Shown here one piece after another: positions 21,438-35,439 of a stretch of DNA of 64,000 nucleotides (the stretch's first letter is position 1; each line of letters begins with the position of its first letter). Below the pieces are notes generated by a model. That model ran no database searches. It worked only from the letters and a program-made list of their open reading frames with translations, and was not told the origin of the DNA. The stretch covers positions 124,001-188,000 of IMG/VR virus record IMGVR_UViG_3300026097_000876; one strand, 5' to 3'. The position numbers and the translations under genes are program-made.

Positions 21438-22226
21438 TTATTTTTTACCGGCTGTTTTTTGTGCAGCAACTTTAACATCAACTGAAAAGGCACCATCTCT
21501 ATACGGATCTGATGGATCGGCTGACGAATCTGGCTCTCTCATATCTTTAGGGTAAACAGGAAACATCTGAATTGCTTGCCATGGCTCAAACCCTAAATCT
21601 TGCATTACAGATGGAAATTCTCTTAATCGTTGTCTAAACAAGATCCATTCATCTTGAAGTGATTGAGGAGCATCAGTCTGTCCAACCTTGGCATCTGTTT
21701 CTTGTAACATAGCGTCACGAACATCTCGTAACTCTTGCCATGTAAGATCCATTTTCGAGCCTGTGGCAGCCCAATCTCTTATGCCAATATTAAATTCACC
21801 TGTTTCAAAATCGTATGTAATATTATTATCATCGTAAATATCACGAGGTTCTACATCATCTGTGTACTCAACATCTGGGTGCCCGTCCGGTGCGTCCCAA
21901 AGAATTTCCCACTCGCGTTGACGTCTTTTTAATATCATATCATCGCGACCGCAATCATTTCCAATTTCACAGAGCAATGGCTGTTGTTTACAGTCTACAG
22001 TAACTCTTGTGATATCAGCACCTGATGGACGTTCAAGATCTCTCTTTTCCCATAAGCACCAACCCGATTCAGTACCGTAATCTTCACTGTCCGGATCGCT
22101 GTTAACTTCAAAGGTTAAAAACTCTGGTCCGTTATAAGTAAATGTGTCGGTTTTTCCTTCTGTAAAACTGTTTGTTCTCCATTCGTCCCACACAGGATAT
22201 GTAAACTCTATACTAATTTTTCTCAT
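21438..22226 (-). CDS. Tail fibre assembly chaperone-like protein
   Basis: C-terminal WQELRDVRDAMLQETD....DAP....EWILFRQRLREFP matches the phage tail assembly chaperone R..R..LL.ETD...D.P...W..YRQ.LRD.P pattern; directly follows the Cys-rich trio. Confidence 0.7.
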   Translation of the reverse strand: MRKISIEFTYPVWDEWRTNSFTEGKTDTFTYNGPEFLTFEVNSDPDSEDYGTESGWCLWEKRDLERPSGADITRVTVDCKQQPLLCEIGNDCGRDDMILKRRQREWEILWDAPDGHPDVEYTDDVEPRDIYDDNNITYDFETGEFNIGIRDWAATGSKMDLTWQELRDVRDAMLQETDAKVGQTDAPQSLQDEWILFRQRLREFPSVMQDLGFEPWQAIQMFPVYPKDMREPDSSADPSDPYRDGAFSVDVKVAAQKTAGKK

Positions 22227-22258: not shown

Positions 22259-23095
22259 TTACATGAATGTGATTCGTACTATACCAGAACCGCCCTGGCC
22301 CGAACCACCTCCACAACATTTCGCCCAATTACCGCAATATGAACTGTAACCTGCTTGGCCTCCGCCTGCTGGCCAGTCAATGTGACACCCACATGAGCAC
22401 CAAGAAACGTTAGTTACACCTACTTGCATTTTACCAATCATTGGCGGTGAACCTGAAAATGAATACGAATAGTTACAATGACATCCGCCATGTCCTGGTT
22501 CTGTGCCCGATGTGCCCATCATACCAAAATCTGCACCAAAAATACCGCAAATATTACAATTACCACATGTATGTGTGTGTCTTGGACCCCAAGCATCACC
22601 GTTACACATCCAGCCGCCACAGCCGCCTACTGTACAAAAATTTGATAAATTATGTCCGTTTACATATGACTTACATCCCATGCCTGCACCACAAGTATGT
22701 GATTTACCACAAGGCCAACTACCACCTGCGCAAACACTATATTGACAACCTGGACTAGTTTCAACAGTTTTTGATGCATAATTTCCGCCGGATCCGCCGA
22801 TACTAAATGAACAGTTGTTACAACAAGTCATGCCAGGGCCTCCGCCTCCGCCACTCCATATTTCAAATGTTACAGTTGATACTCCGTCTGGTACACACCA
22901 ATAGCAACATTTGCCATTTGCTTGTTCACAACAACCACTTTGTCTGGCACACGAGTGGCAGGCCATGCCACGTGCGTTATAGACCCATTGTACTCCATAG
23001 TTATTACCATTTCCGTGTGCAATATCACTATCTTGAATAGTTCCGTCTACTAAACTGTCATTGTCTACTTTTTTATAACTTGCATATGTTGCCAT
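22259..23095 (-). CDS. Cys/Gly-rich putative fibre-tip protein, paralog 1
   Basis: About 29 Cys in 278 aa; glycine-rich-domain scaffold TFEIWSGGGGG...GGSGG.Y...AGG...GGSGIVRIT. Confidence 0.75.
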   Translation of the reverse strand: MATYASYKKVDNDSLVDGTIQDSDIAHGNGNNYGVQWVYNARGMACHSCARQSGCCEQANGKCCYWCVPDGVSTVTFEIWSGGGGGPGMTCCNNCSFSIGGSGGNYASKTVETSPGCQYSVCAGGSWPCGKSHTCGAGMGCKSYVNGHNLSNFCTVGGCGGWMCNGDAWGPRHTHTCGNCNICGIFGADFGMMGTSGTEPGHGGCHCNYSYSFSGSPPMIGKMQVGVTNVSWCSCGCHIDWPAGGGQAGYSSYCGNWAKCCGGGSGQGGSGIVRITFM

Positions 23096-23105
23096 TTATT
23101 TTTTC

Positions 23106-23942
23106 CTATGCGTATGTAATTCTGACCATGCCTGATCCACCCATATTGCCGCCGGCACAACATTTTGCCCAATTGCCGCAATATGAACTTTGTCCTGTTT
23201 GACCGCCACCTGCTGGCCAATTTGTATAGCAAGCACAGTTACACCATGCTTCTGCGTTTGCTCCTGCTGTATGCTTACCAACAAAAGGTGCAACTCCACT
23301 CATACCCCAGTCACCCGATTTACATTGACAACCACCGTGACCACCGGATACTCCAGTTGAGCCCATAATACCAAAATCTGCACCAAAAATGCCACAAATA
23401 TTACAGTTAGCACATGTTTGTGTGTGTCTTGGTCCCCATGCGTCGCCATTACACATCCAGCCAGGGCAACCGCCTGTTGTGCAGAAGTTACTTAAATTAT
23501 ATCCGTTTACATATGAACGGCAACCCATGCCTGCTGTACATGTGTGTGACTTTGAACAAGGCCAAGTTCCTCCAGCACATACTTGATACTGACAACCTGG
23601 ACATGTACTAATTGTTTTAACAGCATAGTTCCCGCCGCTACCACCTGCGGAGTGCATACAATAGTTACAGCAAGTAGAACCTGCTCCTGCACCGCCTCCA
23701 CTCCAAATTTCAAAAGTTACCTTTGATGCTCCATCTGGTACACACCAATAGCAACATCTACCATTTGCTTGTTCACAGCAGTCGCCGGCGTCAGCACAGT
23801 GTTGACAAGCCATGCCACGAGTATTGTATACCCATAATACATTATACTTGTTACCGGCTTGCGGTCCTAATTTCTCAGCTGTAATAGCATTATCGCTAAA
23901 GTTATCTGCTGTTAAAGTTTTATAACTTGCATATGTTGCCAT
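23106..23942 (-). CDS. Cys/Gly-rich putative fibre-tip protein, paralog 2
   Basis: Same Cys framework and length as paralog 1. Confidence 0.75.
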   Translation of the reverse strand: MATYASYKTLTADNFSDNAITAEKLGPQAGNKYNVLWVYNTRGMACQHCADAGDCCEQANGRCCYWCVPDGASKVTFEIWSGGGAGAGSTCCNYCMHSAGGSGGNYAVKTISTCPGCQYQVCAGGTWPCSKSHTCTAGMGCRSYVNGYNLSNFCTTGGCPGWMCNGDAWGPRHTQTCANCNICGIFGADFGIMGSTGVSGGHGGCQCKSGDWGMSGVAPFVGKHTAGANAEAWCNCACYTNWPAGGGQTGQSSYCGNWAKCCAGGNMGGSGMVRITYA

Positions 23943-23952
23943 TTATCTTTTC

Positions 23953-24792
23953 CTATACATAAGTAATTTTTACAATTCCGGAGCCGCCTTGTCCGGAGCC
24001 ACCTGCACAACATTTTGCCCAATTGTCGCAATAACTAGATGTTCCGGGCGTTCCTCCGCCTGCTGGCCAATTAACGTGACAACCGCAAGCACACCATGCT
24101 TCGTTGGTCATTGTTGCTAAATGCATACCAATACCTGCAGCTGCGCCCGTCCAGCTTGTTTGTCCGTGACATCTACAAGTAGTAGTACCTGCTTTAATAC
24201 CAGCACTACCAGACATTCCAAAATCTGCACCAAAGATGCCACAAATTCTACAGTTAGCACAGTTTGATACAGCGTGTCTTTGACCCCAAGCGTCTCCGTT
24301 ACACATCCATCCGCCGCAGCCTCCGTCAGTGCAAAAATTAGATAAGTTATGTCCATTTACGTATGACTTACATCCCATACCTGCTGTACATGTGTGTGAT
24401 TTACCACAAGGCCAACTACCACCTGCACATACTTGATACTGACAACCAGGAGTGGTATCAACGGTTTTAATGGCATAGTTTCCGCCAAATCCACCAACTG
24501 CAAAACTACAATTGTTACAACATGTGTGTCCGGGGCCACCACCGCCTCCACTCCATATTTCAAAAGTTACTTTATATACATTGTCAGGTACACACCAATA
24601 GCAACATCTACCATTTGCTTGTTCACAACAACCACTTTGTCTGGCGCATTGTTGACAAGCCATGCCACGTGTGTTATAGACCCATTGTACTCTACGACAA
24701 GCACCGGCACCTGCAGCTAATTTATCCGAGGTAATAGTGCCTTCTGGAATACCGTCTGATGTTATTTTTTTATAACTTGCATATGATGCCAT
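23953..24792 (-). CDS. Cys/Gly-rich putative fibre-tip protein, paralog 3
   Basis: Same Cys framework; 279 aa. Confidence 0.75.
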   Translation of the reverse strand: MASYASYKKITSDGIPEGTITSDKLAAGAGACRRVQWVYNTRGMACQQCARQSGCCEQANGRCCYWCVPDNVYKVTFEIWSGGGGGPGHTCCNNCSFAVGGFGGNYAIKTVDTTPGCQYQVCAGGSWPCGKSHTCTAGMGCKSYVNGHNLSNFCTDGGCGGWMCNGDAWGQRHAVSNCANCRICGIFGADFGMSGSAGIKAGTTTCRCHGQTSWTGAAAGIGMHLATMTNEAWCACGCHVNWPAGGGTPGTSSYCDNWAKCCAGGSGQGGSGIVKITYV

Positions 24793-24810: not shown

Positions 24811-25260
24811 TTATACAGCAAAGATACGCCAGCCGTATGTGTCACCTGAATAAACTAAATCAAATGATGCGCCTTCTGAATCAACAGTCATATCAGCAGC
24901 ATCGCCTTGAATTAGATTAGAGTTTCTACCTATTGTTAGTGCGTTAGAATCAAACGTTTTACGAATGTCATAAAACCTAACAATATCGCCCATAGACGGT
25001 GAAGCAGGAAGCGTAATTGTAAACGCACCACTGTTTGTATCAACAAACAACTGTTCTCCTGAATTAGCATTATACGCGGTTGTAACCATTTTACCGTTCA
25101 ATACTCCCACAGGTATCCAAGCAGTTCCATTATATAGTTCTAATACGTTAATTTCTGTGTTAAAACGTATAGATCCTGCTCCAGCATCTTCAGTTCGCTG
25201 TGCTGTATTACCAAAAGGAACAGTTAACCCTGGTGAACCGATTGAAATTCTTCTACCCAT
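24811..25260 (-). CDS. Small fibre-type structural protein (149 aa)
   Basis: P.GNTAQR...G.IRFNT....LELYNG..W motif shared with the C-termini of the 36165-39881 and 40018-44073 products; VDTNSGAFTITLPASPS.GD fibre motif. Confidence 0.7.
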   Translation of the reverse strand: MGRRISIGSPGLTVPFGNTAQRTEDAGAGSIRFNTEINVLELYNGTAWIPVGVLNGKMVTTAYNANSGEQLFVDTNSGAFTITLPASPSMGDIVRFYDIRKTFDSNALTIGRNSNLIQGDAADMTVDSEGASFDLVYSGDTYGWRIFAV

Positions 25261-25275
25261 AGTATTTTCCTATCC

Positions 25276-25602
25276 TTATGCCGCTGGTACGGCTGTTTCA
25301 ATTCCCATAACTACTGCTGTTACACTAGTTTGAGACGATCTAACTATGATCTTTTTTGTTGCGTCTACAACAATACCAGTTCTTTCAAGCACGCCGTTTG
25401 GGCCGATTGATGTATCATACTCTAGATAATCTGCCGCTCCCGGAGTGTCTGTTGTTGATACTGCCAGTCTTACGTTTGATGTGTTACTTCCTCTATTACA
25501 GAAAGAAACAGTAACAACGCTATAAGTGTCTGCTGGAACAGTATACGCTGTAGTGTCTGTTGCTGCACTTAGATCGTTTGATCCTAAAATTCCTGATGCC
25601 AT
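25276..25602 (-). CDS. Small virion protein, YTVP family (108 aa)
   Basis: YTVPA...V....CN motif; paralog of 35825-36154 and 44633-44977. Confidence 0.65.
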   Translation of the reverse strand: MASGILGSNDLSAATDTTAYTVPADTYSVVTVSFCNRGSNTSNVRLAVSTTDTPGAADYLEYDTSIGPNGVLERTGIVVDATKKIIVRSSQTSVTAVVMGIETAVPAA

Positions 25603-25635: not shown

Positions 25636-28600
25636 TTAAGTCTTGCTTGTCATAAAGTATGCAAACGCGACCGGTGATCCTGATACTCCACCGTTAAAAT
25701 TCATACCAGTTGTAACAGTAATTGGCGAATTATCAGTTGTACTAATTGTATTTCCTGTAATATTTATTTTACCTGCTGTTACAGCGTTAACGTTCAGAGA
25801 ACTACTTCCTCCACCAATTTGTGAATTAATGTAAGTAATAATTGCTCTTTGCGTTGGAACAACGTTATCTGAATTTGCACTCATTGTACCATCAGTACTA
25901 AATTCATTAATAACTGCTCCGCCTTGTCCTAGACCAACTGCGCCTAGTGACAATTCTTGTAGTCCTGCAAGACTGAATGCACTTGTATTCAAACTTGCTG
26001 AACCTGTTGATTGCTCAACGTTAAACAATCTACCAACTCGGAAGTTACCGTCTTGGTCAGTTGATGTGTAGAACACTCGTCCGCCACCAAATTCTTTTAC
26101 TTCGTCATTTGGATCATTCGCATATTGCGGTGTACCCGGATAGTTTGTTTCTGTAAAGTTACCTGTACCGATATCAAGGAAATCGTGTCCCGTTAATCGT
26201 ACTTGGCTATATCTTCTTCTAATAGTAATATTAGTACCATGTTCAGGTGCTGTTTCGATACCAAGATCTGGAGATACCTGTAAATTAGCTGTATAGTTTC
26301 CTGGACTACCTAGCAATTCTCTAACAAATACAACTTTAAAGAATCTATCATCGCCGTCTAGTTGTAGATTTGCACCTTCAGTTGGAATATCGCTCATTCC
26401 GTATACGTTTAAGAAGTTTGCTGATTGATAGCTATCTGCATAGCCGTCGCCGTCTACAGTAGCACTTGCTGTTTCAAAGTCTGTTCCTCTAGCTGACCAT
26501 GTTGGCTGTGTTAGCACACCGTCACCTACTCTAACTTCGTAAGGTACAGTTAGCGTCTCACTTGGATCTGTAATTGTTAGTGTTGGAAGTGTAACATTAC
26601 TATAACCCGAACCTGGATTTACAATATAAAATTGTGTAATTCTTTCATCTGCCACTTCTGCTCTAACAAATGCGCCAGAACCACTTTCACTAACTACTTC
26701 AACTCTAGGTTCAATAGTGTATGCTGTAGTTGCGTCAAGAGTTGTTTCTACTGAATTACTATGGTGGAAATTATCCCAACCAGCTGATAGATCAGATTCT
26801 TTAGCAATGCTAGCAACTTTTGTGCCCGAGTTGTATGCTGTAATAATACCATATTGACCTGCGCCTGTACCTGCTGTAATTACAATTCTCATACCAATAT
26901 ATTTGGTATTGTTAGCAGTTTCAGTATTTGACAATGTGATAGAATCAACTCCGCCGCCCTGTGCTGTGTTCGAAGCGGTAGTATATCCTCTACCACCTTG
27001 TGTATCAGGATCGTTAAGTGTTCCATCACTATCAGTATCGTTTTCACTAAATGTTGACCCGTCATCTGGGTTGCGAAGTCTAACTTCAAAAATACCGCCG
27101 TTAACAACATTTGCAGAATCAACTACTGCACCAAATCCATTACCACTAATGGTGTAAGTTGCTGTAGAATAGTTATTACCAGCATTAGTGTATTCTAGAT
27201 GTATAATTTCACTACCGTCAGTTAATCCTCTACCAACTTGTGCTTCTAACTTTCTGTTGTTTACACCACCAGTAACAGGTATTTCAGTAACATCAATAAA
27301 CTCAGACACAGCACCGTGATCACCGTATGAACAGTTACCGTTAGTACCACGAATCTTGCCGCCGTTTTCTGCAAGATAGCCGATGTGTCCGTAGTACGAG
27401 AATATAGATACAAGTTCTGCTCTACCTAAGTTGGTTATCCATGCACCAATACCGTCACTTAAAATTTGCGTAAAGTCGTTAGCAACAATTGAATCGTTGC
27501 CGCCATTGTGTATTGCACCGTCAACTTTTAATCCTACACATGCTGTACCAAAAGTTGATACGCCTTGCACATAAGGTGATCGTGTTAAAATCCAAACACG
27601 GTCATCGTCTGGACCCCAGCCTGGATCAAGTGAACAATATGCACCCGCTGACGGACGTCTTGTTCCGTATTCGTTAGGCGAACCTAGTGTTCCTGATAAC
27701 CCGCCTAATGTTTGATTTCTAATACCAGTTGCATCTCGTAACAAATACATATTTTCTAGTGTCGATCCATTAACACTATTACCGTATATATGGCCTGCCA
27801 TTAATGTGGCATAGTTACTACCTTCACTTACTCCGTAAATTAAATCATAAATGAATGCGTCTACATAATGTTTAACATCTTTTTCACAAGCTACTGTGTC
27901 AAAGCTATAAGCAGGGAAGTTGTCTTCAATATATTTTGTAACATCTCTTGCCATATAGTCTTTGTTTAGCATCAACAATCTTGCTGCTGCAAATTTGTCT
28001 TCATCATCGACTCTTTCATTACGTCCTCTAAATCTTGGAGCTGTTGAATCACCCGAAGCGCCATTAACTTCATAATCTATTTTGTCATATAGCTCTTGGC
28101 ATAGGTCACTAAGAATTGTACCAACTGCCGTTGTACTAAGAGGATTAGAATCGTCTTGTGTTAGCGTATTACCAGTTTGTTCTGTTACGTCGTTACCTTC
28201 AACAATATCACTAATAATGCTCTTTAGATGTAGAATGCCTGCCAAACTATAAGTTGTATCACCAGAATCTGTTACAGACCCTGCTGGCTCTACTCTAGTT
28301 GAACGAAGTTCATCGCCTACAACAGCTACTCTTTCTGGTACTCTAATTGGAAGTACTTCTCTATATGTACCGGTTTTAACAAAAACAACTTTGTGATTTT
28401 TTACTTCAGTTGGCAATGTATATCCGCCACCTAATGTAATTGCATTTGTAATTACTTCCATATTAGCTGTAAGCTCAGTCAACGCATTTGATTCTTCTGG
28501 TTTTGTTGTGTCTTTAATTTGCAAGTAACGATCATTTGCTGCAACACTATCCAGTGCTTGGTAATCAGCTGGAGGAGTAGCATTATCTAAAACATCTTCA

Positions 28601-30486
28601 ATAAGATCGATTACAAAGTTTAATGCAGCAACGTTCTGTGTTTCTGAGCCTATATCAAAAAAGTCACCATCTTCTTGATCTTTAATTGCTTGTGCAACTC
28701 TACGAGTTTCAACATTACCGCCGCGTTTTAGATCTATAATTAATGCGTCTGTTGCAAATCCAGCTAATCTTTCAAATTTAGCTTCATTGAAACTAAATCC
28801 AATAAAGAACGGATCGGTTTGTGTAATAATTTGTCTCTTAGCCCATTTTGCTGTTTCAAATGCAATAAACGTTCTATTAACTTCTAATAGATATGCAGCA
28901 TTAGGATTTTTAGGACCTTTTTCTATTTCTTCACACGCATAGCGGATCGTCTTCCAAGGTCTGTCTAAATTTGAACCATTTGTTGGATACGGAGTGTCGG
29001 TGCCATTTGTAGCTACATAGTAAACATCTGGTGTAGAAGAAAAGTCCTTCCACTCAGGAATACCGGTGCTTGCAACACTTAGTACTTGGCCTTCTGCGCC
29101 AATTGGCAATCTAGCTGGTCCTGAGCCACTATAGTAAAGTATGTCGCCTTCGGTTGTTAGTGCGCTTTCTTCAGCACCACTTGCTAAGTTGTTCCAAAAC
29201 TCACCCAATGAATCATTATCTGGACGATTGGCGGTTTCTGAAGTATGTGCGTCAACACAAACATAACTAATCAATCCATAACGTACAGCATCACCTGCAT
29301 CATATAATGTAGCTGTTGTCCAAGTATCTTTCCATTCAATACCTTGGTTTAATCTTGACCAGTAATTAGCATTTGGTGGACGCTGATTTTGGTGATCAGC
29401 TGTACACAAATAAGTATATCCGCCCAATCTTACTACATCGCCAATTCTATAGTCTTGATCGGTAGAATCTTCTCCCCAGTCTCCTCTAAGATTAAAGCCT
29501 GATGTAACTAATTCCCATTTTGAACTACCTGGAGGAAGTTCAGAAAAAACGTTGTCATTAGCAACATATTGGTTACCACCGTATGTTACAAAATCACCTG
29601 GTTGATATCTTTCGTATCCTGACCAAGTATTTTCAAACTCTAGTCCTGGAACAAATTTATCCCAATTAGCAATATCAGCTTGTAGCGTACCTAGCTGAGA
29701 ATCTGGATTGGTTGCTACTGAGGTATGTGCTGCTGTTGCAATCCAAAGTGTTGCACCATAAAGAGCAACATCGTTTACTTTATAACGTGTAGAATTTGTC
29801 CATTCGCCCTTATATTCAAAACCTCTGTTTAAATAATCCCATTTTCCTTGATCGTCTTCAAGGCCAAGTGCTTCGGTTGCGGCAGATGTGTGTCCGGTAT
29901 TACAAACATACAGTGTTCCGCCGTATTTTATAATATCATTAACTTTGTATCTTGTAGAAGTAGCCCAATTTTGTTTCCAGTCCTGGCCCTCGGAGAATAG
30001 ATCCCATTTGAGAATATCAGCTTCTAACCCTAATGCATCGGTAGCTGCTGCTGTATGACCAGTATTACAAAGATAAATGTTTCCGCCGTACTTAACCAAG
30101 TCGTTTGCTTTATAAACTGTAGCTGCAGTCCAAACATCTTTCCAGTCAATCGAAGTAGCAAATTGATCCCATTTGGCTTGATCGTCTTCAAGAACTGTTT
30201 GAGCCGAATGACCAGTATTACAAATATAAATAATACCACCATATCGTACGATATCATTTTCTTTATAAAAAGTTTCTGTAGTCCAGTCTGCTTTCCATTC
30301 AGTACCGTCACTAAATTTATTCCAGTGGTCTTCGTCATTGTAGAAATTAGAACTTGATGTGTGTCCTTGAACTGCTACATAGGTTCTGCCACCGTACCTA
30401 ATAACATCATCTTTTAAATATTCGGTAGAAGCAACCCATGCATCTTTCCAAATAAATCTAATTCTACCGAGTTTAAATTCTGCCAT
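25636..30486 (-). CDS. Giant virion structural protein (1616 aa) with N-terminal Trp repeats and beta-helix
   Basis: MAEFKLGRIRFIWK start; ~50-aa W...T.Y..ND.V.YGG..Y.C...HTS repeats; YYVATNGTD; NDFTQILSDGIG; FYTSTDQDGNFRVG. Confidence 0.8.
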   Translation of the reverse strand: MAEFKLGRIRFIWKDAWVASTEYLKDDVIRYGGRTYVAVQGHTSSSNFYNDEDHWNKFSDGTEWKADWTTETFYKENDIVRYGGIIYICNTGHSAQTVLEDDQAKWDQFATSIDWKDVWTAATVYKANDLVKYGGNIYLCNTGHTAAATDALGLEADILKWDLFSEGQDWKQNWATSTRYKVNDIIKYGGTLYVCNTGHTSAATEALGLEDDQGKWDYLNRGFEYKGEWTNSTRYKVNDVALYGATLWIATAAHTSVATNPDSQLGTLQADIANWDKFVPGLEFENTWSGYERYQPGDFVTYGGNQYVANDNVFSELPPGSSKWELVTSGFNLRGDWGEDSTDQDYRIGDVVRLGGYTYLCTADHQNQRPPNANYWSRLNQGIEWKDTWTTATLYDAGDAVRYGLISYVCVDAHTSETANRPDNDSLGEFWNNLASGAEESALTTEGDILYYSGSGPARLPIGAEGQVLSVASTGIPEWKDFSSTPDVYYVATNGTDTPYPTNGSNLDRPWKTIRYACEEIEKGPKNPNAAYLLEVNRTFIAFETAKWAKRQIITQTDPFFIGFSFNEAKFERLAGFATDALIIDLKRGGNVETRRVAQAIKDQEDGDFFDIGSETQNVAALNFVIDLIEDVLDNATPPADYQALDSVAANDRYLQIKDTTKPEESNALTELTANMEVITNAITLGGGYTLPTEVKNHKVVFVKTGTYREVLPIRVPERVAVVGDELRSTRVEPAGSVTDSGDTTYSLAGILHLKSIISDIVEGNDVTEQTGNTLTQDDSNPLSTTAVGTILSDLCQELYDKIDYEVNGASGDSTAPRFRGRNERVDDEDKFAAARLLMLNKDYMARDVTKYIEDNFPAYSFDTVACEKDVKHYVDAFIYDLIYGVSEGSNYATLMAGHIYGNSVNGSTLENMYLLRDATGIRNQTLGGLSGTLGSPNEYGTRRPSAGAYCSLDPGWGPDDDRVWILTRSPYVQGVSTFGTACVGLKVDGAIHNGGNDSIVANDFTQILSDGIGAWITNLGRAELVSIFSYYGHIGYLAENGGKIRGTNGNCSYGDHGAVSEFIDVTEIPVTGGVNNRKLEAQVGRGLTDGSEIIHLEYTNAGNNYSTATYTISGNGFGAVVDSANVVNGGIFEVRLRNPDDGSTFSENDTDSDGTLNDPDTQGGRGYTTASNTAQGGGVDSITLSNTETANNTKYIGMRIVITAGTGAGQYGIITAYNSGTKVASIAKESDLSAGWDNFHHSNSVETTLDATTAYTIEPRVEVVSESGSGAFVRAEVADERITQFYIVNPGSGYSNVTLPTLTITDPSETLTVPYEVRVGDGVLTQPTWSARGTDFETASATVDGDGYADSYQSANFLNVYGMSDIPTEGANLQLDGDDRFFKVVFVRELLGSPGNYTANLQVSPDLGIETAPEHGTNITIRRRYSQVRLTGHDFLDIGTGNFTETNYPGTPQYANDPNDEVKEFGGGRVFYTSTDQDGNFRVGRLFNVEQSTGSASLNTSAFSLAGLQELSLGAVGLGQGGAVINEFSTDGTMSANSDNVVPTQRAIITYINSQIGGGSSSLNVNAVTAGKINITGNTISTTDNSPITVTTGMNFNGGVSGSPVAFAYFMTSKT

Positions 30487-30522: not shown

Positions 30523-33500
30523 TCATCCGTTAAACTCGTCGCGTTCCATTCTACCACCTAAAAACATATTAAGTGCTTGTAAGCCGCCGCCGAGTGGTCC
30601 GTTAACAATAAACAATGGGTCAACTTGTGTCATTGCTTCTGCATTGTTTGATCCAGCTGTGTTTGACATGTTGTTGTCTTCTATTACTACCTGACCTGCT
30701 GTAAGTTGGTTAGTAAATAGATTTGATCCACCACCTGTGAATCTGTTTTCAATATATAATTTTAATGCTTGCATTGTTGGGATAATATTATCGCTGTTAG
30801 CAACAAACGTATTATCAGTACTAAATTCTCTAATAACAGCCTGTGTTCCGCCGACTCTAATGCCGCCTAGTCTAAGTTCGTCTAAGCCGTCTAAGTCAAA
30901 GAAATCAGCACTTAGAGTAACACCGCCCTGTGCTTGAGATACTCTAAACAATTCGCCAACACGATAGTTACCATCTTGGTCACTTGCTGTGTAAAACACT
31001 CGTCCGCCGTTTGATTCAACAACTTCGTTTGCTTGTACAGTATCGTTAGCAGCCGTTTGACCTTCAACATATAGTGCCGGATAGTTTGTATCTCCAAAGT
31101 TACCTGTACCAATGTCAAGGAAATCGTGTCCAGTAATTCTAACTTGTGAATATCTTTCACGTATAGTAGCTGTTGTATTATGTATTGGTGCGTTTGTTCT
31201 ACCTATTACCGGCGATATTTGGAAAGTAATACTAATGTTTGGAGCTGTACCTTGCTCAGTGTTCACTTTAACTAATCTATAAATTGTGCTATCGCCTTCA
31301 AACCTAACGTTAGCGCCTGGTCCTGGAACTAGACTTAATCCATTGAGTTTCATAGTATTACCAATTTGTAATTCTTCTCCAAATCCATCTCCAGAAATTG
31401 TTACAATTGCACTTTGATACCCAGTTCCTCGATTATAATAAATCGGTTGCGGTAAAACTCCGCTGTTAATATCAACTGTAAAGTATGGTTCGCCGAACTC
31501 TTCAGGATCTTCAATTGTTACTGTGGGATCTACTACATATCCTGAACCAGGATCATAAATTTTAAATAACGATAATCTTCCGTTAGTTACTTCGACCCTA
31601 GCAAATGCCTTTGCTCCGCCAGTAATAAGACTACCAGTAGTTGATTGTTCATTTAAACACACAAAGGATGGAACACCTGCATTAACTCCACCTGCAATAC
31701 CAGTAGAGTTATTATTAGTAGGTCTAATTTTCCAATAATATCCGTTGTCCGAACTTAGCGTAGTTCCTGTCGCACTTACAGCTACAAACACACCTTGAGA
31801 ATATCCAACTCTCCAATCTTCTCTACCTGAGTCGCCAACAAGTCCTGAATCACTCCAACTAGTTCCGTTCGAACTGTATATAATTCTATCTGAATTATCC
31901 ATTGCTGCAACCCAGCAATTGTTACCAAAAATTATGTCTGAATATACTTCTGGACTTGATGGTGTAACCGCTGCTCCCGTAGACCAAGTAGAACCATTGT
32001 CTGTAGATATAACTGTGGTTCCGTCTTCGGCTAATGCAATCCATTTTCCTGCACCGTATGCAAGTCCGACCCAGTCAGTGCTGCTAGCACCTGTTGCTAC
32101 TGTTGCCCAATTACTGTTTGGTACTACTGTTGAATCTTCTGCTGTAGTTAGTGTGTTAATATATATATTTGCATCGCCGGTAGCAATAGCCATAATCTTA
32201 TCATTGTTTTCTCCACCAATTGCAACTTTTTTCCAAGTTGTTGATAATGGCAATGTTGAGTGATCAAACGATATACCGTCATTCGAAAATACAAGACGAT
32301 CAGATCCGTCAGCAACCGCTGCCATTACAGGTCCATTTTTAGCAAATGAAACATAACTTAATCCGTAATCTGTATCTCTTTCAGTCCAAACGCTAGTGTC
32401 TGACGAAACATAAAAACTAGATACACCTGTAGGAGCATAATACCATTGGCCCAAACTATCACTGTATCCGATATCGTGTGCGCCTAACTGTACTGGACGA
32501 TCTGCTTTTGCAAATGTTGGTTCTGAAATTGTAACTCTAGGCTCATAATCGTAAACGGTAGTAGGATCAAGATTAGTAGCATTTACTTTACCCGGAACAA
32601 TATTGTCCCATCCAGGTTGATCATCTGAATCTCTATAAACTGTTGCAACCTTAGTTACTTCGTTGTAGCTTTGAATATATCCATACTGGCCGGCACCTAG
32701 TCCTTCCTTAATTAGAATTCTCATTCCTAATAACTGAGCTTCCGTTCTTACTTCTGATGCAGCTAACGTAATACTACTTAAATCTCCGTCTTGAGCTGTG
32801 TTAGAGAACGATTTAAATCCTTCTCCGCCTACGTTTGTACTATCGTCTGGTAAGGCTAAATCAATTTTTGAAAGAGCATTGACTCTAATTTCTTCAAAGC
32901 GCATATCAAGATCAGTACCCGATGCTTGACTAACTGTAGAAGATGCTGTAGTATATTGTTGTCCAGTATTTTTGTATGCAAGAGCTAAAATTTGCGAACC
33001 AGTACTAAACACTTCATCTATATTTGCTTCTCCACTTTGGTTATCTACAGTTGCAGTTTGTGGCGTCTCAGTACTATCAAATCCTTCTGAAACACTACCA
33101 AATTTTCCGTATGAGTTGTTACCATTTGCTGAACGTAGAATACCACCGTTTTCAGCTAAGTATCCAATGTGGCAATAATAAGTGAATACAGAAACAAGTT
33201 CTGAACGCCCTCTATTTGTTGCCCAATATCCAATTCCGTCACTAATTACTTGTGTAAAATCGTTAGCAACAATTGATCTGTTACCACCGTTATGTAATGC
33301 ACCGTCAATTTTCATACCAACGCAATTTTCACCAATTGCTGTTACACCCTGTACATACGTTGATTTACTTGAAACCCAAACACTTTGATCATCAGGGCCT
33401 GTTCCTGGATCTAGAGACACAAACGCATTTCCTGGAATAGGTCTTGCTGTTCCGTAATCATTGTTTCCGCCTAATGTACCTGTTAGATCCTTAAATGTTA

Positions 33501-35439
33501 AATTTCTAATACCGCATCCGTTTCTAACATAAAACATATCTCGTCTATTATTATCATCTGGTATTGAAAGAGGTTCTGGATTAGGATCTGCAACAGTTCT
33601 TTCGCCTAGTACAACATCACGTTGTGCATCAGCAGGTCTAACAGTAGTTGATCTTAACTCCGATCCAACTAATGCTACTTTACTAGGAATACTAATAGGT
33701 AATAATTCTGCAAAGTCTCCAGCCATTACTTTTACTGTAGCTCCGTCACCTACTCGATTGATTTCATCTTCTAGCAAATAATTCATTGCAAATCTAATAG
33801 TTCTAAATGGTGCGTTTAGCGTACCGCCTTGTGACTTGTCGTCGATACCATTTCTAGAAACATAAAAAACATTTTCTATTAGATCTAAACTATCCCATGT
33901 TGGCATCCCATTCGTTGATCTAATTACTTGCCCTGTAGTACCAATAGCTAAACGTTGTGTATCAATAGCGGTAGAATCTTGGTCTTCGAAAGTTTTAAGA
34001 TCTCCTAACTTTGCAAGTTTATTAGTACGTGTGCCTAAGATCATAATTTTCCAATAATTTTGATCTGGTTGTTCAACGTCAAGATCTGGTCTAGATGCAG
34101 ATTCTGTTGATCTATGATAGGTCAAACATACGTATGATGTGCCTTGCCATGTAACAATATCTCCTTCAAAATATTCCTGATCGTCTTCCCACGTATTTTT
34201 AAACTGTCTACCATCGATAACTTTTTCCCAATATGAAGGATATTGATCTGGTTGGAGATTAGTATTGTCTTGAATGGCAATATATAAACTACCACTATGT
34301 CTAACAAGATCACCAGTGCGATAATCTAAAAAGCTACTTGTTCCGTCTTCGCCGTTCCAGTCGTCTCTAAACTTGTAACCTTCAAATGTTAAGTTCCAAT
34401 CTAAAGAATTTTGACTAGGAGGAAGTGCTACGTTAAAACTAAGTGATTTATAAATGTAACCGCCGTATAATACTAGATCATTTGGTTGATAATAAACATT
34501 ATCTGCCCAAGTATTTTCGTATTCTGATCCAGGCAAATATGTAGTCCATTTGCTTGTTCCGTAATCTGTATTAAATCCTTCATCACCTTCTGTTGAAGTG
34601 TGCCCAGCTAGGCACTTCATTAGGTTGCCGCCGCGTTTTACAATATCATTTTTCTTATATCTATATGCTTCTTGCCATTCGCCAGTAACAGTATCATCGT
34701 CTAAAATTCTAGTTACGTACTCGATACCGTCAATTTGTATTTCCCACTTAGATTGATCTTCTTCGAGACCTAATTCAGGGTTATCAGCCGAGGTATGACC
34801 AGTGATACACTTATAAACAATACCGCCATATTTTACAATATCATTTTCACGATAACGTGTACCAATTGACCAAGTAGCTTTCCATGTGTCACTATCTGAC
34901 AATACAGTCCAGTCGTTTTGATTAGCTTCGAGACCAAGTGCTGTTGTTGCGGCTGAAACGTGCTGTGCTGTTGCTTTGTAAACTTTACCGTTATATCTTA
35001 CAAGATCGTTAATTCTATAAAGTGTATTAATGGTCCAGTTATATTTCCAATCTGCTGACGAAACAGCAACTAGTTTCCATTTTCCGATGTCAGCAACTAG
35101 ACCGTCTGTTCCTGAAACAAAGGTTGCAGAAGAGGTATGTGATTCAGTACACTCATATACACTAGCACCATATTTTACAATATTACCAACAGCATATATT
35201 GTGCTAACTGTCCAGTCTCCTAACCAAACTTTACCTTCAGATTGCTTTTTCCATTTTGGACTTGCAGGCGTAACATCGGTGCCTGCTAAATCATTATAAA
35301 ATGTAGCACCTGTGTGAGTTCGTAGGCATACATAGGTAAAACCTTTGTATGAAACCATATCGTCAATGATATAATCGTTTCCTCCGGACCATTCGCCCTT
35401 CCAATTAAATCTGATTCTACTTAGTTTAAATTCTGCCAT
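30523..35439 (-). CDS. Giant virion structural protein (1638 aa), paralog of 25636-30486
   Basis: MAEFKLSRIRFNWK start; same repeats and motifs (FYVSRNGIDD, NDFTQVISDGIG, TGHDFLDIGTGNF, SDQDGNYRVG); has an additional beta-propeller-like insertion (YGAGKWIA, FGNNCWVA, YSQGVFVA repeats). Confidence 0.8.
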   Translation of the reverse strand: MAEFKLSRIRFNWKGEWSGGNDYIIDDMVSYKGFTYVCLRTHTGATFYNDLAGTDVTPASPKWKKQSEGKVWLGDWTVSTIYAVGNIVKYGASVYECTESHTSSATFVSGTDGLVADIGKWKLVAVSSADWKYNWTINTLYRINDLVRYNGKVYKATAQHVSAATTALGLEANQNDWTVLSDSDTWKATWSIGTRYRENDIVKYGGIVYKCITGHTSADNPELGLEEDQSKWEIQIDGIEYVTRILDDDTVTGEWQEAYRYKKNDIVKRGGNLMKCLAGHTSTEGDEGFNTDYGTSKWTTYLPGSEYENTWADNVYYQPNDLVLYGGYIYKSLSFNVALPPSQNSLDWNLTFEGYKFRDDWNGEDGTSSFLDYRTGDLVRHSGSLYIAIQDNTNLQPDQYPSYWEKVIDGRQFKNTWEDDQEYFEGDIVTWQGTSYVCLTYHRSTESASRPDLDVEQPDQNYWKIMILGTRTNKLAKLGDLKTFEDQDSTAIDTQRLAIGTTGQVIRSTNGMPTWDSLDLIENVFYVSRNGIDDKSQGGTLNAPFRTIRFAMNYLLEDEINRVGDGATVKVMAGDFAELLPISIPSKVALVGSELRSTTVRPADAQRDVVLGERTVADPNPEPLSIPDDNNRRDMFYVRNGCGIRNLTFKDLTGTLGGNNDYGTARPIPGNAFVSLDPGTGPDDQSVWVSSKSTYVQGVTAIGENCVGMKIDGALHNGGNRSIVANDFTQVISDGIGYWATNRGRSELVSVFTYYCHIGYLAENGGILRSANGNNSYGKFGSVSEGFDSTETPQTATVDNQSGEANIDEVFSTGSQILALAYKNTGQQYTTASSTVSQASGTDLDMRFEEIRVNALSKIDLALPDDSTNVGGEGFKSFSNTAQDGDLSSITLAASEVRTEAQLLGMRILIKEGLGAGQYGYIQSYNEVTKVATVYRDSDDQPGWDNIVPGKVNATNLDPTTVYDYEPRVTISEPTFAKADRPVQLGAHDIGYSDSLGQWYYAPTGVSSFYVSSDTSVWTERDTDYGLSYVSFAKNGPVMAAVADGSDRLVFSNDGISFDHSTLPLSTTWKKVAIGGENNDKIMAIATGDANIYINTLTTAEDSTVVPNSNWATVATGASSTDWVGLAYGAGKWIALAEDGTTVISTDNGSTWSTGAAVTPSSPEVYSDIIFGNNCWVAAMDNSDRIIYSSNGTSWSDSGLVGDSGREDWRVGYSQGVFVAVSATGTTLSSDNGYYWKIRPTNNNSTGIAGGVNAGVPSFVCLNEQSTTGSLITGGAKAFARVEVTNGRLSLFKIYDPGSGYVVDPTVTIEDPEEFGEPYFTVDINSGVLPQPIYYNRGTGYQSAIVTISGDGFGEELQIGNTMKLNGLSLVPGPGANVRFEGDSTIYRLVKVNTEQGTAPNISITFQISPVIGRTNAPIHNTTATIRERYSQVRITGHDFLDIGTGNFGDTNYPALYVEGQTAANDTVQANEVVESNGGRVFYTASDQDGNYRVGELFRVSQAQGGVTLSADFFDLDGLDELRLGGIRVGGTQAVIREFSTDNTFVANSDNIIPTMQALKLYIENRFTGGGSNLFTNQLTAGQVVIEDNNMSNTAGSNNAEAMTQVDPLFIVNGPLGGGLQALNMFLGGRMERDEFNG

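What the first reader, a model, noticed from the sequence alone, without database searches (positions are those of the whole stretch)
22259..24792. Three tandem ~10% Cys proteins with a fixed Cys framework and one hypervariable segment
The genes repeat at 847/850-nt period, and nearly all Cys positions are shared (CC..C, C..C..C, WC.C.C, KCC). The stretch between GADFG and WC.C.C differs almost completely among paralogs. So many Cys suggests multi-metal clusters or a disulfide cage, unusual for a protein assembled in the cytoplasm. It may be a heterotrimeric or interchangeable receptor-binding tip.
Basis: partly seen in the sequence, partly recalled or inferred. Interest (0 to 1): 0.65.

Follow-up and report, generated by a model that had tools for sequence, protein, structure and literature searches.

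The report
Three cysteine-laced tail-fibre tip proteins
Three neighbouring phage genes encode sister copies of a known type of tail-fibre tip protein (a TNF-like sandwich plus a glycine-rich lattice), unusual in carrying 28 conserved cysteines and in always occurring as a set of exactly three, which points to a three-part host-recognition device.

Summary
Three tandem minus-strand genes (279/278/278 aa, start-to-start 850/847 nt) encode 68-71% identical proteins with 29-30 Cys (10.4-10.8%) and 18-20% Gly. Twenty-nine Cys columns are shared. The GADFG-to-WCxCxC stretch keeps 7 of 41 columns, against 112 of 152 in the core. A second variable stretch (residues 11-40) was missed.

They are not orphans. 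An AlphaFold model matches the solved tail fibre gp24 of cyanophage Pam3 (Z 18.1), a Bxb1 tail-tip protein and ALK/LTK TG domains. A profile comparison ties the family to Pfam Gly_rich_2. The next gene is a tail-fibre-assembly chaperone, and giant fibre genes lie upstream. So these are receptor-binding fibre-tip subunits, in a cysteine-rich variant common in marine phages.

Exactly three copies occur in 57 of 57 complete related contigs and in five further lineages (S-SSM7/Sf-FS3, S-CAM1 and three metagenomic ones). Each copy is a stable ortholog group. The variable segment is mainly paralog-specific (dN/dS 0.58 between paralogs, 0.24-0.29 within orthologs), so it is not an arms-race hotspot.

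Two points stay open: heterotrimer versus three homotrimers (complex prediction gave only weak support), and disulfide versus metal. This is a new variant of a known kind, of moderate interest.

The parts
23953..24792 (-). Paralog 1 (first in the operon): 279 aa, 30 Cys. TNF-like plus glycine-rich (TG) fibre-tip subunit. Carries a paralog-specific Cys32 in the N-terminal segment.
   Evidence: ORF and composition. Monophyletic positional ortholog group with starred support. Cys32 is present in 97% of position-1 orthologs.
23106..23942 (-). Paralog 2: 278 aa, 30 Cys. TG fibre-tip subunit with a paralog-specific Cys114.
22259..23095 (-). Paralog 3: 278 aa, 29 Cys. TG fibre-tip subunit, and the one that was modelled.
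   Evidence: AlphaFold2 model: pLDDT 77.4, pTM 0.75. Match to the Pam3 fibre 7ypx_A: Z 18.1, rmsd 2.8 A, 195 residues, model residues 31-278. PHROG phrog_4205: E 4.6e-34.
24097..24216 (-). Variable segment of paralog 1, between GADFG and WCxCxC.
   Evidence: Coordinates checked by translation. Divergence figures.
23247..23369 (-). Variable segment of paralog 2.
22403..22522 (-). Variable segment of paralog 3. The model places three short beta strands here (198-203, 209-213, 225-229), with a conserved Gly/Cys scaffold.
24673..24762 (-). N-terminal variable segment (residues 11-40) of paralog 1. Its counterparts are 23823-23912 (paralog 2) and 22976-23065 (paralog 3). It is the presumed attachment or oligomerisation segment and lies before the TG domain.
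   Evidence: 8 of 30 columns are identical and pairwise identity is 37-43%. dN/dS is 0.37 between paralogs and 0.12-0.16 within orthologs. The model has low confidence for residues 1-30.
21438..22226 (-). Gene immediately downstream: a 262-aa tail-fibre-assembly (Tfa-type) chaperone with an N-terminal beta-rich domain and a C-terminal helical domain.
   Evidence: Pfam PF16778 Phage_tail_APC: E 0.0011 on the window protein, and precomputed on most of its 82 homologs. PHROGs 9740, 8746 and 4912, 'tail fiber assembly'. Model pLDDT 88.3: beta strands in residues 3-149, helices in 163-221. This domain order matches that described for Pam3 gp25 (PMC9608196).
23096..23108 (-). Junction between paralogs 2 and 3: the stop codon overlaps an AGGA Shine-Dalgarno-like motif 9-10 nt before the next ATG. 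The junction between paralogs 1 and 2, at 23943-23955, has the same layout.
   Evidence: Sequence read directly. The first 24 coding nt are nearly identical in all three genes.
24811..25602 (-). Two small fibre-like genes directly upstream (149 aa at 24811-25260 and 108 aa at 25276-25602). Both are conserved in the same position in S-CAM1, S-SSM7 and Sf-FS3.
   Evidence: PHROG tail and tail-fibre families. Synteny.
25636..30486 (-). Giant fibre protein (1616 aa) with CBM_5_12 repeats. A second one (1638 aa) lies at 30523-35439.
   Evidence: Pfam PF02839: E 2.8e-38 and 3.6e-46. Giant fibre genes also precede the trio in S-SSM7, Sf-FS3, S-CAM1, L077 and the JGI contig.

Best explanation
The three genes encode paralogous subunits of a short tail fibre or fibre-tip adhesin of the Pam3-gp24 type. 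Each has a short N-terminal attachment segment followed by a TNF-like beta-sandwich, from which glycine-rich loops extend and pack into a polyglycine-II-type lattice. That much is shown. The rest is inferred. The genes are co-translated from one operon. The subunits are folded and brought together by the Tfa-type chaperone encoded immediately downstream, as Pam3 gp25 does for gp24. They are then mounted on the virion near or on the giant fibres encoded upstream, where they bind host surface receptors. The 28 conserved cysteines, many of which bracket the short glycine-rich motifs (for example C122/C129/C135/C141 and C154/C159/C164), most likely cross-link the lattice. I favour disulfides that form or persist in oxic seawater. 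Exactly three paralogs are kept in every lineage examined, and each has its own fixed N-terminal and variable segments. The most likely assembly is therefore one copy of each in a three-headed, pseudo-threefold fibre tip (about 0.45). Three separate homotrimers is the close alternative (about 0.35).
For: Fold: the model of paralog 3 has pLDDT 77.4 and pTM 0.75. It matches Pam3 fibre gp24 at VIA Z 18.1, rmsd 2.8 A over 195 residues, with Foldseek E 9e-7. It also matches Bxb1 tail-tip chain 9d93_Qa (Z 12.1) and ALK/LTK TG domains (Z 7.3-9.7). BFVD gives 195 viral matches at E<=0.001, many named glycine-rich domain, tail fibre or minor tail protein. Family: hhalign of the window family against 14 distant relatives gives probability 100%, E 6e-42, and 11 of those 14 hit PF21722. 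Context: the chaperone lies downstream and giant CBM_5_12 fibre genes lie upstream. The same gene order is found in S-SSM7, Sf-FS3, S-CAM1, L077 and L080. Pam3 gp24 is a virion fibre seen by cryo-EM and mass spectrometry, and it needs the gp25 chaperone at 3:3 stoichiometry (PMC9942802, PMC9608196). Copy number: 57 of 57 related viral contigs with enough flank carry exactly three copies. So do S-SSM7, Sf-FS3, S-CAM1, L070/L072, L080 and each of the two modules in L077. Positional orthologs form starred clades. Synonymous divergence between paralogs is saturated (dS 1.4-1.8) while core dN/dS is 0.13, so the three are old and each is under selection. Complex prediction of the three chains: ipSAE 0.49 against a best control of 0.03, runs agreeing in at least 74% of contacts, partner pLDDT 61, verdict 'weak support'.
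Against: No Pfam or NCBIfam model hits the window proteins directly. The N-terminal segment is only about 30 residues and is poorly modelled. Pam3 gp24 trimerises mainly through a helical domain of about 75 residues, so the mode of oligomerisation and attachment may differ. Virion presence is untested, because no isolate carrying the trio has virion proteomics in the papers read. The complex score falls in the band where passes are 'more often wrong than right unless likely beforehand', and it cannot distinguish a hetero- from a homo-oligomer. In L080 at least two of the three paralogs have their own Tfa-like gene, which fits three separate fibre-chaperone pairs as well as a hetero-assembly. 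Cys counts per protein are not consistently even (28-32). No thiol oxidase or thioredoxin was found in the 262 kb held, so the disulfide reading has no direct support.
Confidence: 0.75

Rival explanations
1. Three independent homotrimeric short fibres (or monomeric gp38-like caps). Each has its own receptor specificity, set by its variable segment, and its own docking site, set by its N-terminal segment. Together they give the phage a fixed set of three adhesins that do not co-assemble.
For: Pam3 gp24 is a homotrimer. In L080 the three Gly_rich_2 genes are each followed by a small ORF, and two of these are Tfa-like, which suggests separate fibre-chaperone pairs. The paralogs differ most in the two segments expected to set docking and binding. 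The window also encodes several giant fibre proteins that could each carry a different tip.
Against: Independent adhesins usually vary in number between phage lineages. Here the number is three in six lineages and in 57 of 57 contigs. The first 10 residues are nearly identical in all three, so they do not obviously address different docking sites. In S-CAM1 the middle paralog lacks the N-terminal extension that the other two have, which would be odd for a self-sufficient fibre.
Confidence: 0.35
2. The cysteines are metal ligands (for example about seven Zn-Cys4 sites or metallothionein-like clusters) and not disulfides, so these are metal-stabilised or metal-binding fibre proteins.
For: The conserved core of 28 Cys divides by four. 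CxxC, CC, CxC and CxxCxxC motifs are frequent. The proteins fold in a reducing cytoplasm, and no phage thiol oxidase or thioredoxin was found in the 262 kb held. Cys counts per protein are often odd.
Against: No metal-binding family hits the proteins at E<=1. Only two His are invariant. The Cys are spread through the whole TG domain at the ends of glycine-rich motifs and do not form compact knuckles. The protein is expected to work outside the cell in oxic water. Pam3 virions carry structural disulfides.
Confidence: 0.2
3. The variable segment is a target of programmed or arms-race hypervariation, either driven by a diversity-generating retroelement or evolving under positive selection like the T2 gp38 hypervariable segments.
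For: It is the least conserved part. Within ortholog groups its dN/dS is 2-3 times that of the core (0.24-0.29 against 0.10-0.13). The homolog of the upstream 149-aa protein in Sf-FS3 is annotated as carrying an Mtd N-terminal domain.
Against: dN/dS stays well below 1. Nonsynonymous divergence among orthologs is only 1.2-1.7 times that of the core (pN 0.13-0.19 against 0.11). The segment is a stable signature of each paralog across 36 dereplicated contigs. No reverse transcriptase was found in the record. The fold is not the C-type-lectin fold of Mtd.
Confidence: 0.05
4. The proteins are not virion components. They might be assembly-only scaffolds, decoys, or proteins released at lysis.
For: No proteomic evidence exists for any member. 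Only a DNA run holds the locus.
Against: The fold matches a fibre seen in a virion. The genes sit inside the fibre module between the giant fibres and a fibre chaperone. All three genes show strong purifying selection.
Confidence: 0.07

Closest known systems
Tail fibre gp24 of freshwater cyanophage Pam3 (PDB 7YPX, 7YFW), with its chaperone gp25
   Same: Same TNF-like beta-sandwich plus glycine-rich domain (Z 18.1, rmsd 2.8 A, 195 residues, about 20% identity). Similar size. A Tfa-type chaperone gene lies immediately downstream, with a non-conserved beta N-domain and a conserved helical C-domain. In both, variability is concentrated away from the glycine scaffold.
   Different: Pam3 has one gene, which forms a homotrimer; here there are three fixed paralogs. 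Pam3 gp24 has an N-terminal helical trimerisation and docking domain of about 75 residues, against about 30 poorly modelled residues here. In gp24 the papers read name only Cys28, whereas here 28 Cys are conserved. Whole-protein glycine content here is 18-20%, against 39% in the Pam3 glycine-rich domain alone. No sequence-level hit to gp24 was found.
Pfam PF21722 (Gly_rich_2), 'glycine-rich domain-containing proteins' of phages and giant viruses
   Same: Relatives of the window proteins hit the model over its full length (P0155 42.2 bits, P0122 27.6 bits, cut-off 24.3). The profile-profile link to those relatives has probability 100%. Shared motifs include VTFEIWGGGGGG, GGxGGxYA and a C-terminal GGxGxVxITY.
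   Different: The window proteins themselves score below the reporting threshold. This branch has replaced much of the glycine with a fixed cysteine framework (6-12% Cys in nearly all of the 370 representatives found).
Receptor-binding adhesin gp38 of Salmonella phage S16 and coliphage T2
   Same: Works alike. It is a small protein at a fibre tip, built from conserved glycine-rich motifs in a polyglycine-II lattice with variable segments between them, and it has a short N-terminal attachment part (as described in PMC9942802 and PMC9608196).
   Different: gp38 has a beta-helix middle domain where these proteins have a TNF-like sandwich, and a three-layer lattice of 10 motifs. It is a monomer capping trimeric gp37. 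It did not appear among the structural matches here.
TG (TNF-like/glycine-rich) ligand-binding domain of the animal receptor kinases ALK and LTK
   Same: Same two-part fold (Z 7.3-9.7 over about 140-148 residues).
   Different: It is an animal cell-surface receptor domain that binds a cytokine. Identity is only 16-18%, and there is no functional link.
Glycine-rich tail-tip protein of mycobacteriophage Bxb1 (PDB 9D93, chains Qa/Qb)
   Same: Same fold (Z 12.1, 186 residues, 21% identity). It is located at a phage tail tip.
   Different: It belongs to a siphovirus of an actinobacterial host and is not cysteine-rich so far as the match shows. I did not read its description.

Membership tests
Pfam PF21722 Gly_rich_2 | A hit to the family HMM above the gathering cut-off (24.3 bits) | tested here: not met
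   There is no hit at E<=1 for any of the three window proteins, and none in the six-frame search of the window's own genome.
Pfam PF21722 Gly_rich_2 | Homology to bona fide members, by transitive or profile-profile comparison | tested here: met
   The profile of the window family finds P0155 at E 2.4e-18 and P0122 at 8e-82. These two hit PF21722 at 42.2 and 27.6 bits. Eleven of 14 distant relatives hit it. hhalign of A2 against A4 gives probability 100%, E 6.2e-42, over 208 columns.
Pam3 gp24-type TG tail fibre | A TNF-like beta-sandwich with a glycine-rich lattice domain | tested here: met
   Z 18.1, rmsd 2.8 A, 195 aligned residues, covering model residues 31-278. Foldseek E 9.1e-7, probability 1.00. 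The glycine-rich motifs are visible in the sequence.
Pam3 gp24-type TG tail fibre | A long N-terminal alpha-helical bundle that trimerises the fibre and docks it to the baseplate | tested here: not met
   Only about 30 residues precede the TG domain. The model shows two 3-residue helical turns and pLDDT of 44-62 there. The structural alignment starts at chain residue 76 of gp24.
Pam3 gp24-type TG tail fibre | A dedicated Tfa-type chaperone encoded next to the fibre gene | tested here: met
   The 262-aa downstream protein hits PF16778 at E 0.0011, and most of its homologs carry that domain. It also hits PHROG tail-fibre-assembly families. No solved structure matched its model.
Pam3 gp24-type TG tail fibre | Trimeric assembly | tested here: inconclusive
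   Three-chain prediction: ipSAE 0.49, best control 0.03, partner pLDDT 61, verdict 'weak support'. The test cannot separate hetero- from homo-oligomers.
Pam3 gp24-type TG tail fibre | Presence in the virion | not testable with these tools
   Sullivan et al. 2010 report virion proteomics for S-SM1, with earlier data for S-PM2 and Syn9, but none for S-SSM7. No RNA or protein data were found for the locus.
S16/T2 gp38 adhesin | A beta-helix middle domain and a three-layer polyglycine-II sandwich capping gp37 | tested here: not met
   gp38 (6F45) does not appear among the structural matches. The middle domain here is a TNF-like sandwich. The resemblance is functional and architectural only.
Diversity-generating-retroelement variable proteins (Mtd-like) | A reverse transcriptase with a template repeat, and a C-type-lectin-fold variable region | tested here: not met
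   No RVT_1 hit was found in the 262-kb record, which is 73% complete. The fold is different.
Cysteine-rich metal-binding proteins (zinc ribbons, metallothioneins) | A recognisable metal-binding domain or cluster geometry | tested here: inconclusive
   No Pfam or NCBIfam hit at E<=1. Cys-Cys distances in the model could not be read, because coordinates are not exposed.

The most novel reading that the evidence does not exclude
The three paralogs form an obligate 1:1:1 heterotrimeric fibre tip: one fibre with three different receptor-binding heads. Its polyglycine-II lattice is laced by about 14 disulfides, made without any recognisable phage-encoded thiol oxidase. This three-gene design has been kept, or re-homogenised, separately in T4-like cyanophages and in unrelated jumbo marine myoviruses.
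Probability: 0.3. Interest if true: 0.7.

Novelty: new variant of a known kind. Interest (0 to 1): 0.5.

Why it matters
Phage tail fibres are almost always homotrimers. A fibre tip built from three fixed paralogs would be a different way to combine several receptor specificities in one organelle, and it would matter for predicting the host range of abundant marine phages. The module is shared between T4-like cyanophages (S-SSM7, S-CAM1, Sf-FS3, all cultured) and a PA5oct/Phosso-like jumbo phage lineage known only from metagenomes. The question can therefore be tested directly in existing isolates. A polyglycine-II lattice in which glycine is partly replaced by a conserved framework of 28 cysteines is also of interest to structural biologists and protein designers. 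If the three turn out to be ordinary separate homotrimers with structural disulfides, the finding is still a useful annotation of a large family (PHROG 4205, 'unknown function') but not a surprise.

Tried and rejected
1. Direct family scans of the three proteins found nothing in Pfam at E<=1 or in NCBIfam. PHROGs gave only an 'unknown function' family.
2. Sequence searches of solved structures with the 3-sequence and the 78-sequence profile gave nothing meaningful.
3. Megablast of the locus against isolate phages gave no match.
4. I tried to infer disulfide pairs from co-occurrence of Cys columns and from the parity of Cys counts in 69 diverse relatives. The correlations follow clades, and parity was 38 even against 31 odd, so this was uninformative. 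Model coordinates are not exposed, so Cys-Cys distances could not be measured.
5. I searched the window's own genome for Erv1/ALR thiol oxidase and for thioredoxin. Neither was found. The oxidase control also found nothing in any control genome, and the record is only 73% complete, so this is weak negative evidence.
6. A DGR explanation was rejected: no reverse transcriptase was found and dN/dS is below 1.
7. The hypothesis that one ancient triplication is shared by all lineages with simple positional orthology was rejected. Holding all position-1 genes in one clade costs 180 log-likelihood units (AU p 2.5e-24). The same tests for positions 2 and 3 did not finish.
8. Fold searches with the chaperone model gave only generic helical matches (best Z 6.7), and Pam3 gp25 and Mu Tfa were not recovered. 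Its identification rests on sequence families.
9. The complex prediction gave 'weak support' only. I do not count it as evidence for a heterotrimer in particular.
10. The search of sequencing runs found one DNA run and no RNA run, so read laying was not used and expression remains untested.
11. Literature searches for PF21722 found no paper, and the one paper found for polyglycine-II phage adhesins (a polyproline-II predictor) was not read. No description of this trio turned up.

Full report
**1. What is there**

On the minus strand lie three back-to-back ORFs: 23953-24792 (279 aa), 23106-23942 (278 aa) and 22259-23095 (278 aa). Start-to-start distances are 850 and 847 nt.

Each gene is preceded by a stop codon overlapping an AGGA motif 9-10 nt before the ATG. 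The first 24 coding nucleotides are almost identical in all three.

The proteins are 68-71% identical. They carry 30, 30 and 29 Cys (10.4-10.8%) and 18-20% Gly. The other 38 ORFs of 150 aa or more in the window have a median of 0.66% Cys and a maximum of 2.7%. Twenty-nine Cys columns are identical in all three.

The stretch between GADFG and WCxCxC keeps only 7 of 41 columns, against 112 of 152 in the core before it. Pairwise identity there is 30-37.5%, against 79-85% in the core. No window that poor arose in 100,000 column shuffles.

Two amendments apply:
- A Gly/Cys scaffold survives inside the variable segment.
- Residues 11-40 form a second, equally divergent segment (8 of 30 columns identical).

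**2. What the proteins are**

Direct scans gave nothing in Pfam or NCBIfam. PHROGs gave only phrog_4205, 'unknown function'.

The word-index protein search found 224 relatives at E<=0.001, and the 120 listed share 58-87% identity with the query. Some of them carry a precomputed PF21722 (Gly_rich_2) hit.

An AlphaFold2 model of the third paralog, built on a 78-sequence alignment, has pLDDT 77.4 and pTM 0.75. Its structural matches are:
- the solved tail fibre gp24 of cyanophage Pam3: Foldseek E 9e-7; VIA-align Z 18.1, rmsd 2.8 A, 195 residues, model residues 31-278 against chain residues 76-275;
- a tail-tip chain of mycobacteriophage Bxb1: Z 12.1;
- the TNF-like/glycine-rich (TG) domains of ALK and LTK: Z 7.3-9.7;
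- nothing unrelated scores above Z 4.

In the library of predicted viral structures there are 195 matches at E<=0.001. Many are named glycine-rich domain-containing protein, tail fibre or minor tail protein.

The exhaustive profile search found 370 representatives at E<=0.001, nearly all with 6-12% Cys. Eleven of 14 of the most glycine-rich ones hit PF21722 (best E 3.7e-15). Their profile aligns to the window family with probability 100%, E 6e-42.

The window proteins are therefore a divergent, cysteine-rich branch of the Gly_rich_2/TG fibre superfamily, even though the Pfam model itself does not reach them.

**3. What the solved relative does**

The Pam3 papers give the following (PMC9942802; PMC9608196):
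- gp24 is the phage's only tail fibre and is a homotrimer.
- It has an N-terminal helical bundle for docking, a TNF-like domain, and a distal glycine-rich domain of 12 glycine-rich motifs in a four-layer lattice.
- The less conserved distal tip is proposed to bind the receptor.
- The architecture is likened to the S16 gp38 adhesin.
- Pam3 virions also carry structural disulfides.

**4. Context in the window**

The gene immediately downstream (21438-22226, 262 aa) belongs to the tail-fibre-assembly chaperone family:
- PF16778 hits at E 0.0011 here and is precomputed on most of its 82 homologs.
- It also hits PHROG 'tail fiber assembly' families.
- Its model (pLDDT 88.3) has a beta-rich N-terminal part (residues 3-149) and a helical C-terminal part (163-221), the same domain order as gp25.
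- No solved structure matched it.

Upstream lie two small fibre-like genes (149 and 108 aa) and two giant proteins (1616 and 1638 aa) with CBM_5_12 repeats. Downstream of the chaperone come a GT9-like protein, 2OG-Fe(II) oxygenases, a carbamoyltransferase and a tryptophan halogenase.

**5. The trio elsewhere**

The window is part of a 262-kb IMG/VR virus record, and the record holds only these three copies.

Among 71 related viral contigs, all 57 with enough flank have exactly three tandem copies of 278-281 aa (two middle ORFs were called longer, at 301 and 304 aa).

Three tandem Cys-rich, Gly-rich genes followed by the chaperone homolog also occur in these isolates:
- cyanophages S-SSM7 and Sf-FS3; S-SSM6a shows three matching places in the tblastn search but was not examined further;
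- cyanophage S-CAM1, with proteins of 311, 278 and 299 aa carrying 36, 31 and 25 Cys.

They also occur in two distant metagenomic lineages:
- L080 and a JGI contig: three Gly_rich_2 genes, each followed by a small ORF, two of which are Tfa-like.
- L077: a module of three Gly_rich_2 genes plus Tfa-like genes, present twice.

**6. Evolution**

In the window's lineage (36 dereplicated contigs), genes at positions 1, 2 and 3 each form a clade with starred support.

Across lineages the three genes cluster by lineage, not by position. Forcing all position-1 genes together costs 180 log-likelihood units (AU p 2.5e-24). So the set of three was either created more than once or re-homogenised after the lineages split, and in every case it ended at three.

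Nei-Gojobori dN/dS by segment (paralog comparisons are within one genome):

| Segment | Between paralogs | Within ortholog groups |
|---|---|---|
| Core | 0.13 | 0.10-0.13 |
| N-terminal variable segment | 0.37 | 0.12-0.16 |
| GADFG-WCxCxC segment | 0.58 | 0.24-0.29 |

Synonymous divergence between paralogs in one genome is saturated (dS 1.4-1.8).

The 'hypervariable' segment is thus mainly a fixed signature of each paralog. It keeps evolving 2-3 times faster than the core, but it shows no overall positive selection and no diversity-generating machinery (no reverse transcriptase).

**7. The cysteines**

Across the 108 orthologs, 27 Cys columns are invariant and one more is 94-100% conserved, giving a core of 28. 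The extra cysteines are paralog-specific:
- Cys32 in 97% of position-1 genes; it lies in the N-terminal segment.
- Cys114 in 83% of position-2 genes.
- Cys67 in positions 1 and 3.

Many core Cys bracket the short glycine-rich motifs, at 117/122/129/135/141, 154/159/164, 177/180/183, 233/235/237 and 260/261. That arrangement would let them tie neighbouring lattice strands together.

Twenty-eight fits 14 disulfides and seven Cys4 metal sites equally well. I could not decide between them:
- Model coordinates are not exposed.
- Co-occurrence and parity analyses were uninformative.
- No thiol oxidase or thioredoxin was found in the 73%-complete record.

I favour disulfides (about 0.55-0.6) for three reasons. 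The protein works outside the cell in oxic water. Pam3 virions use disulfides. From my own knowledge, not tested here, the snow-flea antifreeze protein is a polyglycine-II bundle stapled by disulfides.

**8. How it most likely works**

Shown:
- the TG fold;
- the fibre-module context;
- the chaperone neighbour;
- three old, individually conserved paralogs.

Inferred:
- The three are made in equal amounts from one operon.
- They are folded and brought together by the chaperone.
- They form the receptor-binding tip of a fibre.
- The cysteine framework stiffens a lattice that has lost part of its glycine.

Because the number three is fixed in six lineages, I give a 1:1:1 heterotrimer about 0.45 and three separate homotrimers about 0.35.

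The three-chain complex prediction passed only weakly: ipSAE 0.49, best control 0.03, runs agreeing in at least 74% of contacts, partner pLDDT 61. At scores of 0.60 or under the mark was reached by 5 of 78 solved complexes and by all 4 mismatches that passed. The test cannot separate hetero- from homo-assembly and may simply reflect the solved Pam3 trimer.

**9. Novelty**

The fold, the family and the fibre-plus-chaperone module are known. I found no description of the following in the papers searched:
- the cysteine-laced version of the domain;
- its strict occurrence as three paralogs;
- its spread across unrelated marine myoviruses.

I rate it a new variant of a known kind, of moderate interest. 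Interest would rise if the heterotrimer is confirmed.

**10. Limits and compliance**

Virion association and expression could not be tested. Only one DNA run holds the locus, and read laying was not used.

No alternative genetic code was used.

Noticed in passing
window 46554-47717 (major capsid protein), 51362-53080 (portal); whole 262-kb record: The phage is not a T4-like cyanophage. Its capsid protein is 66-71% identical to those of jumbo myoviruses of Proteobacteria (Sinorhizobium Phosso, Vibrio 2.275.O, Xanthomonas XaC1, Pseudomonas PA5oct). The portal is under 50% identical to the same group. No psbA was found in the record. The host is unknown.
   Followed up: partly
window about 13700-35400, compared with L001 (S-SSM7), L002 (Sf-FS3) and L081 (S-CAM1): A whole fibre module is syntenic between this jumbo phage and T4-like Synechococcus phages. 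It comprises giant CBM_5_12 fibres, two small fibre-like genes, the Cys-rich trio, a Tfa-like chaperone, a GT9-like 350-aa protein, 2OG-Fe(II) oxygenases, a carbamoyltransferase and a tryptophan halogenase. This implies exchange of the module between unrelated phage lineages. The constant company of modifying enzymes might mean that the fibres are modified after translation.
   Followed up: partly
L077:1335-8710 and L080:1-3476: In a distant lineage the module of three Gly_rich_2 genes plus Tfa-like genes is duplicated in tandem (L077). In another, each of the three Gly_rich_2 genes is followed by its own small ORF, and two of these three are recognisably Tfa-like (L080).
   Followed up: partly
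window 23066-23095, 23913-23942, 24763-24792 (codons 1-10 of the three genes): The first 10 codons are nearly identical at the nucleotide level in all three genes. Among orthologs their synonymous divergence is only 0.10-0.27 for paralogs 2 and 3, against more than 1 elsewhere. This suggests a constraint on the RNA (translation initiation or coupling) or local gene conversion.
   Followed up: no
window 24697-24699 (Cys32 of paralog 1); 23601-23603 (Cys114 of paralog 2): These are paralog-specific extra cysteines. Cys32, in the N-terminal attachment segment, is present in 97% of position-1 orthologs and in none of the others. Cys114 is present in 83% of position-2 orthologs. Cys32 recalls Cys28 of Pam3 gp24, which links the fibre covalently to the baseplate.
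   Followed up: no
L081:6055-6891 (S-CAM1 middle paralog): In S-CAM1 the middle one of the three Cys-rich proteins starts almost directly with the TG domain and lacks the N-terminal extension that the other two have. This would be odd for a self-sufficient fibre.
   Followed up: no
window 22403-22522, 23247-23369, 24097-24216: Within ortholog groups the variable segment has lower synonymous divergence (dS 0.60-0.78) than the core (0.97-1.26), despite higher non-synonymous divergence. The cause is unexplained. Possible causes are codon constraints of Gly-rich sequence or more recent exchange of this segment between phages.
   Followed up: no
L006 (IMGVR_UViG_3300007609_000015), and run X1: A second IMG/VR contig (67 kb) matches paralog 3 at 100% identity and carries the same trio. 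The only public run found to hold the locus (93% of sampled words) is labelled a soil metagenome, which is unexpected for a module otherwise seen in marine phages.
   Followed up: no
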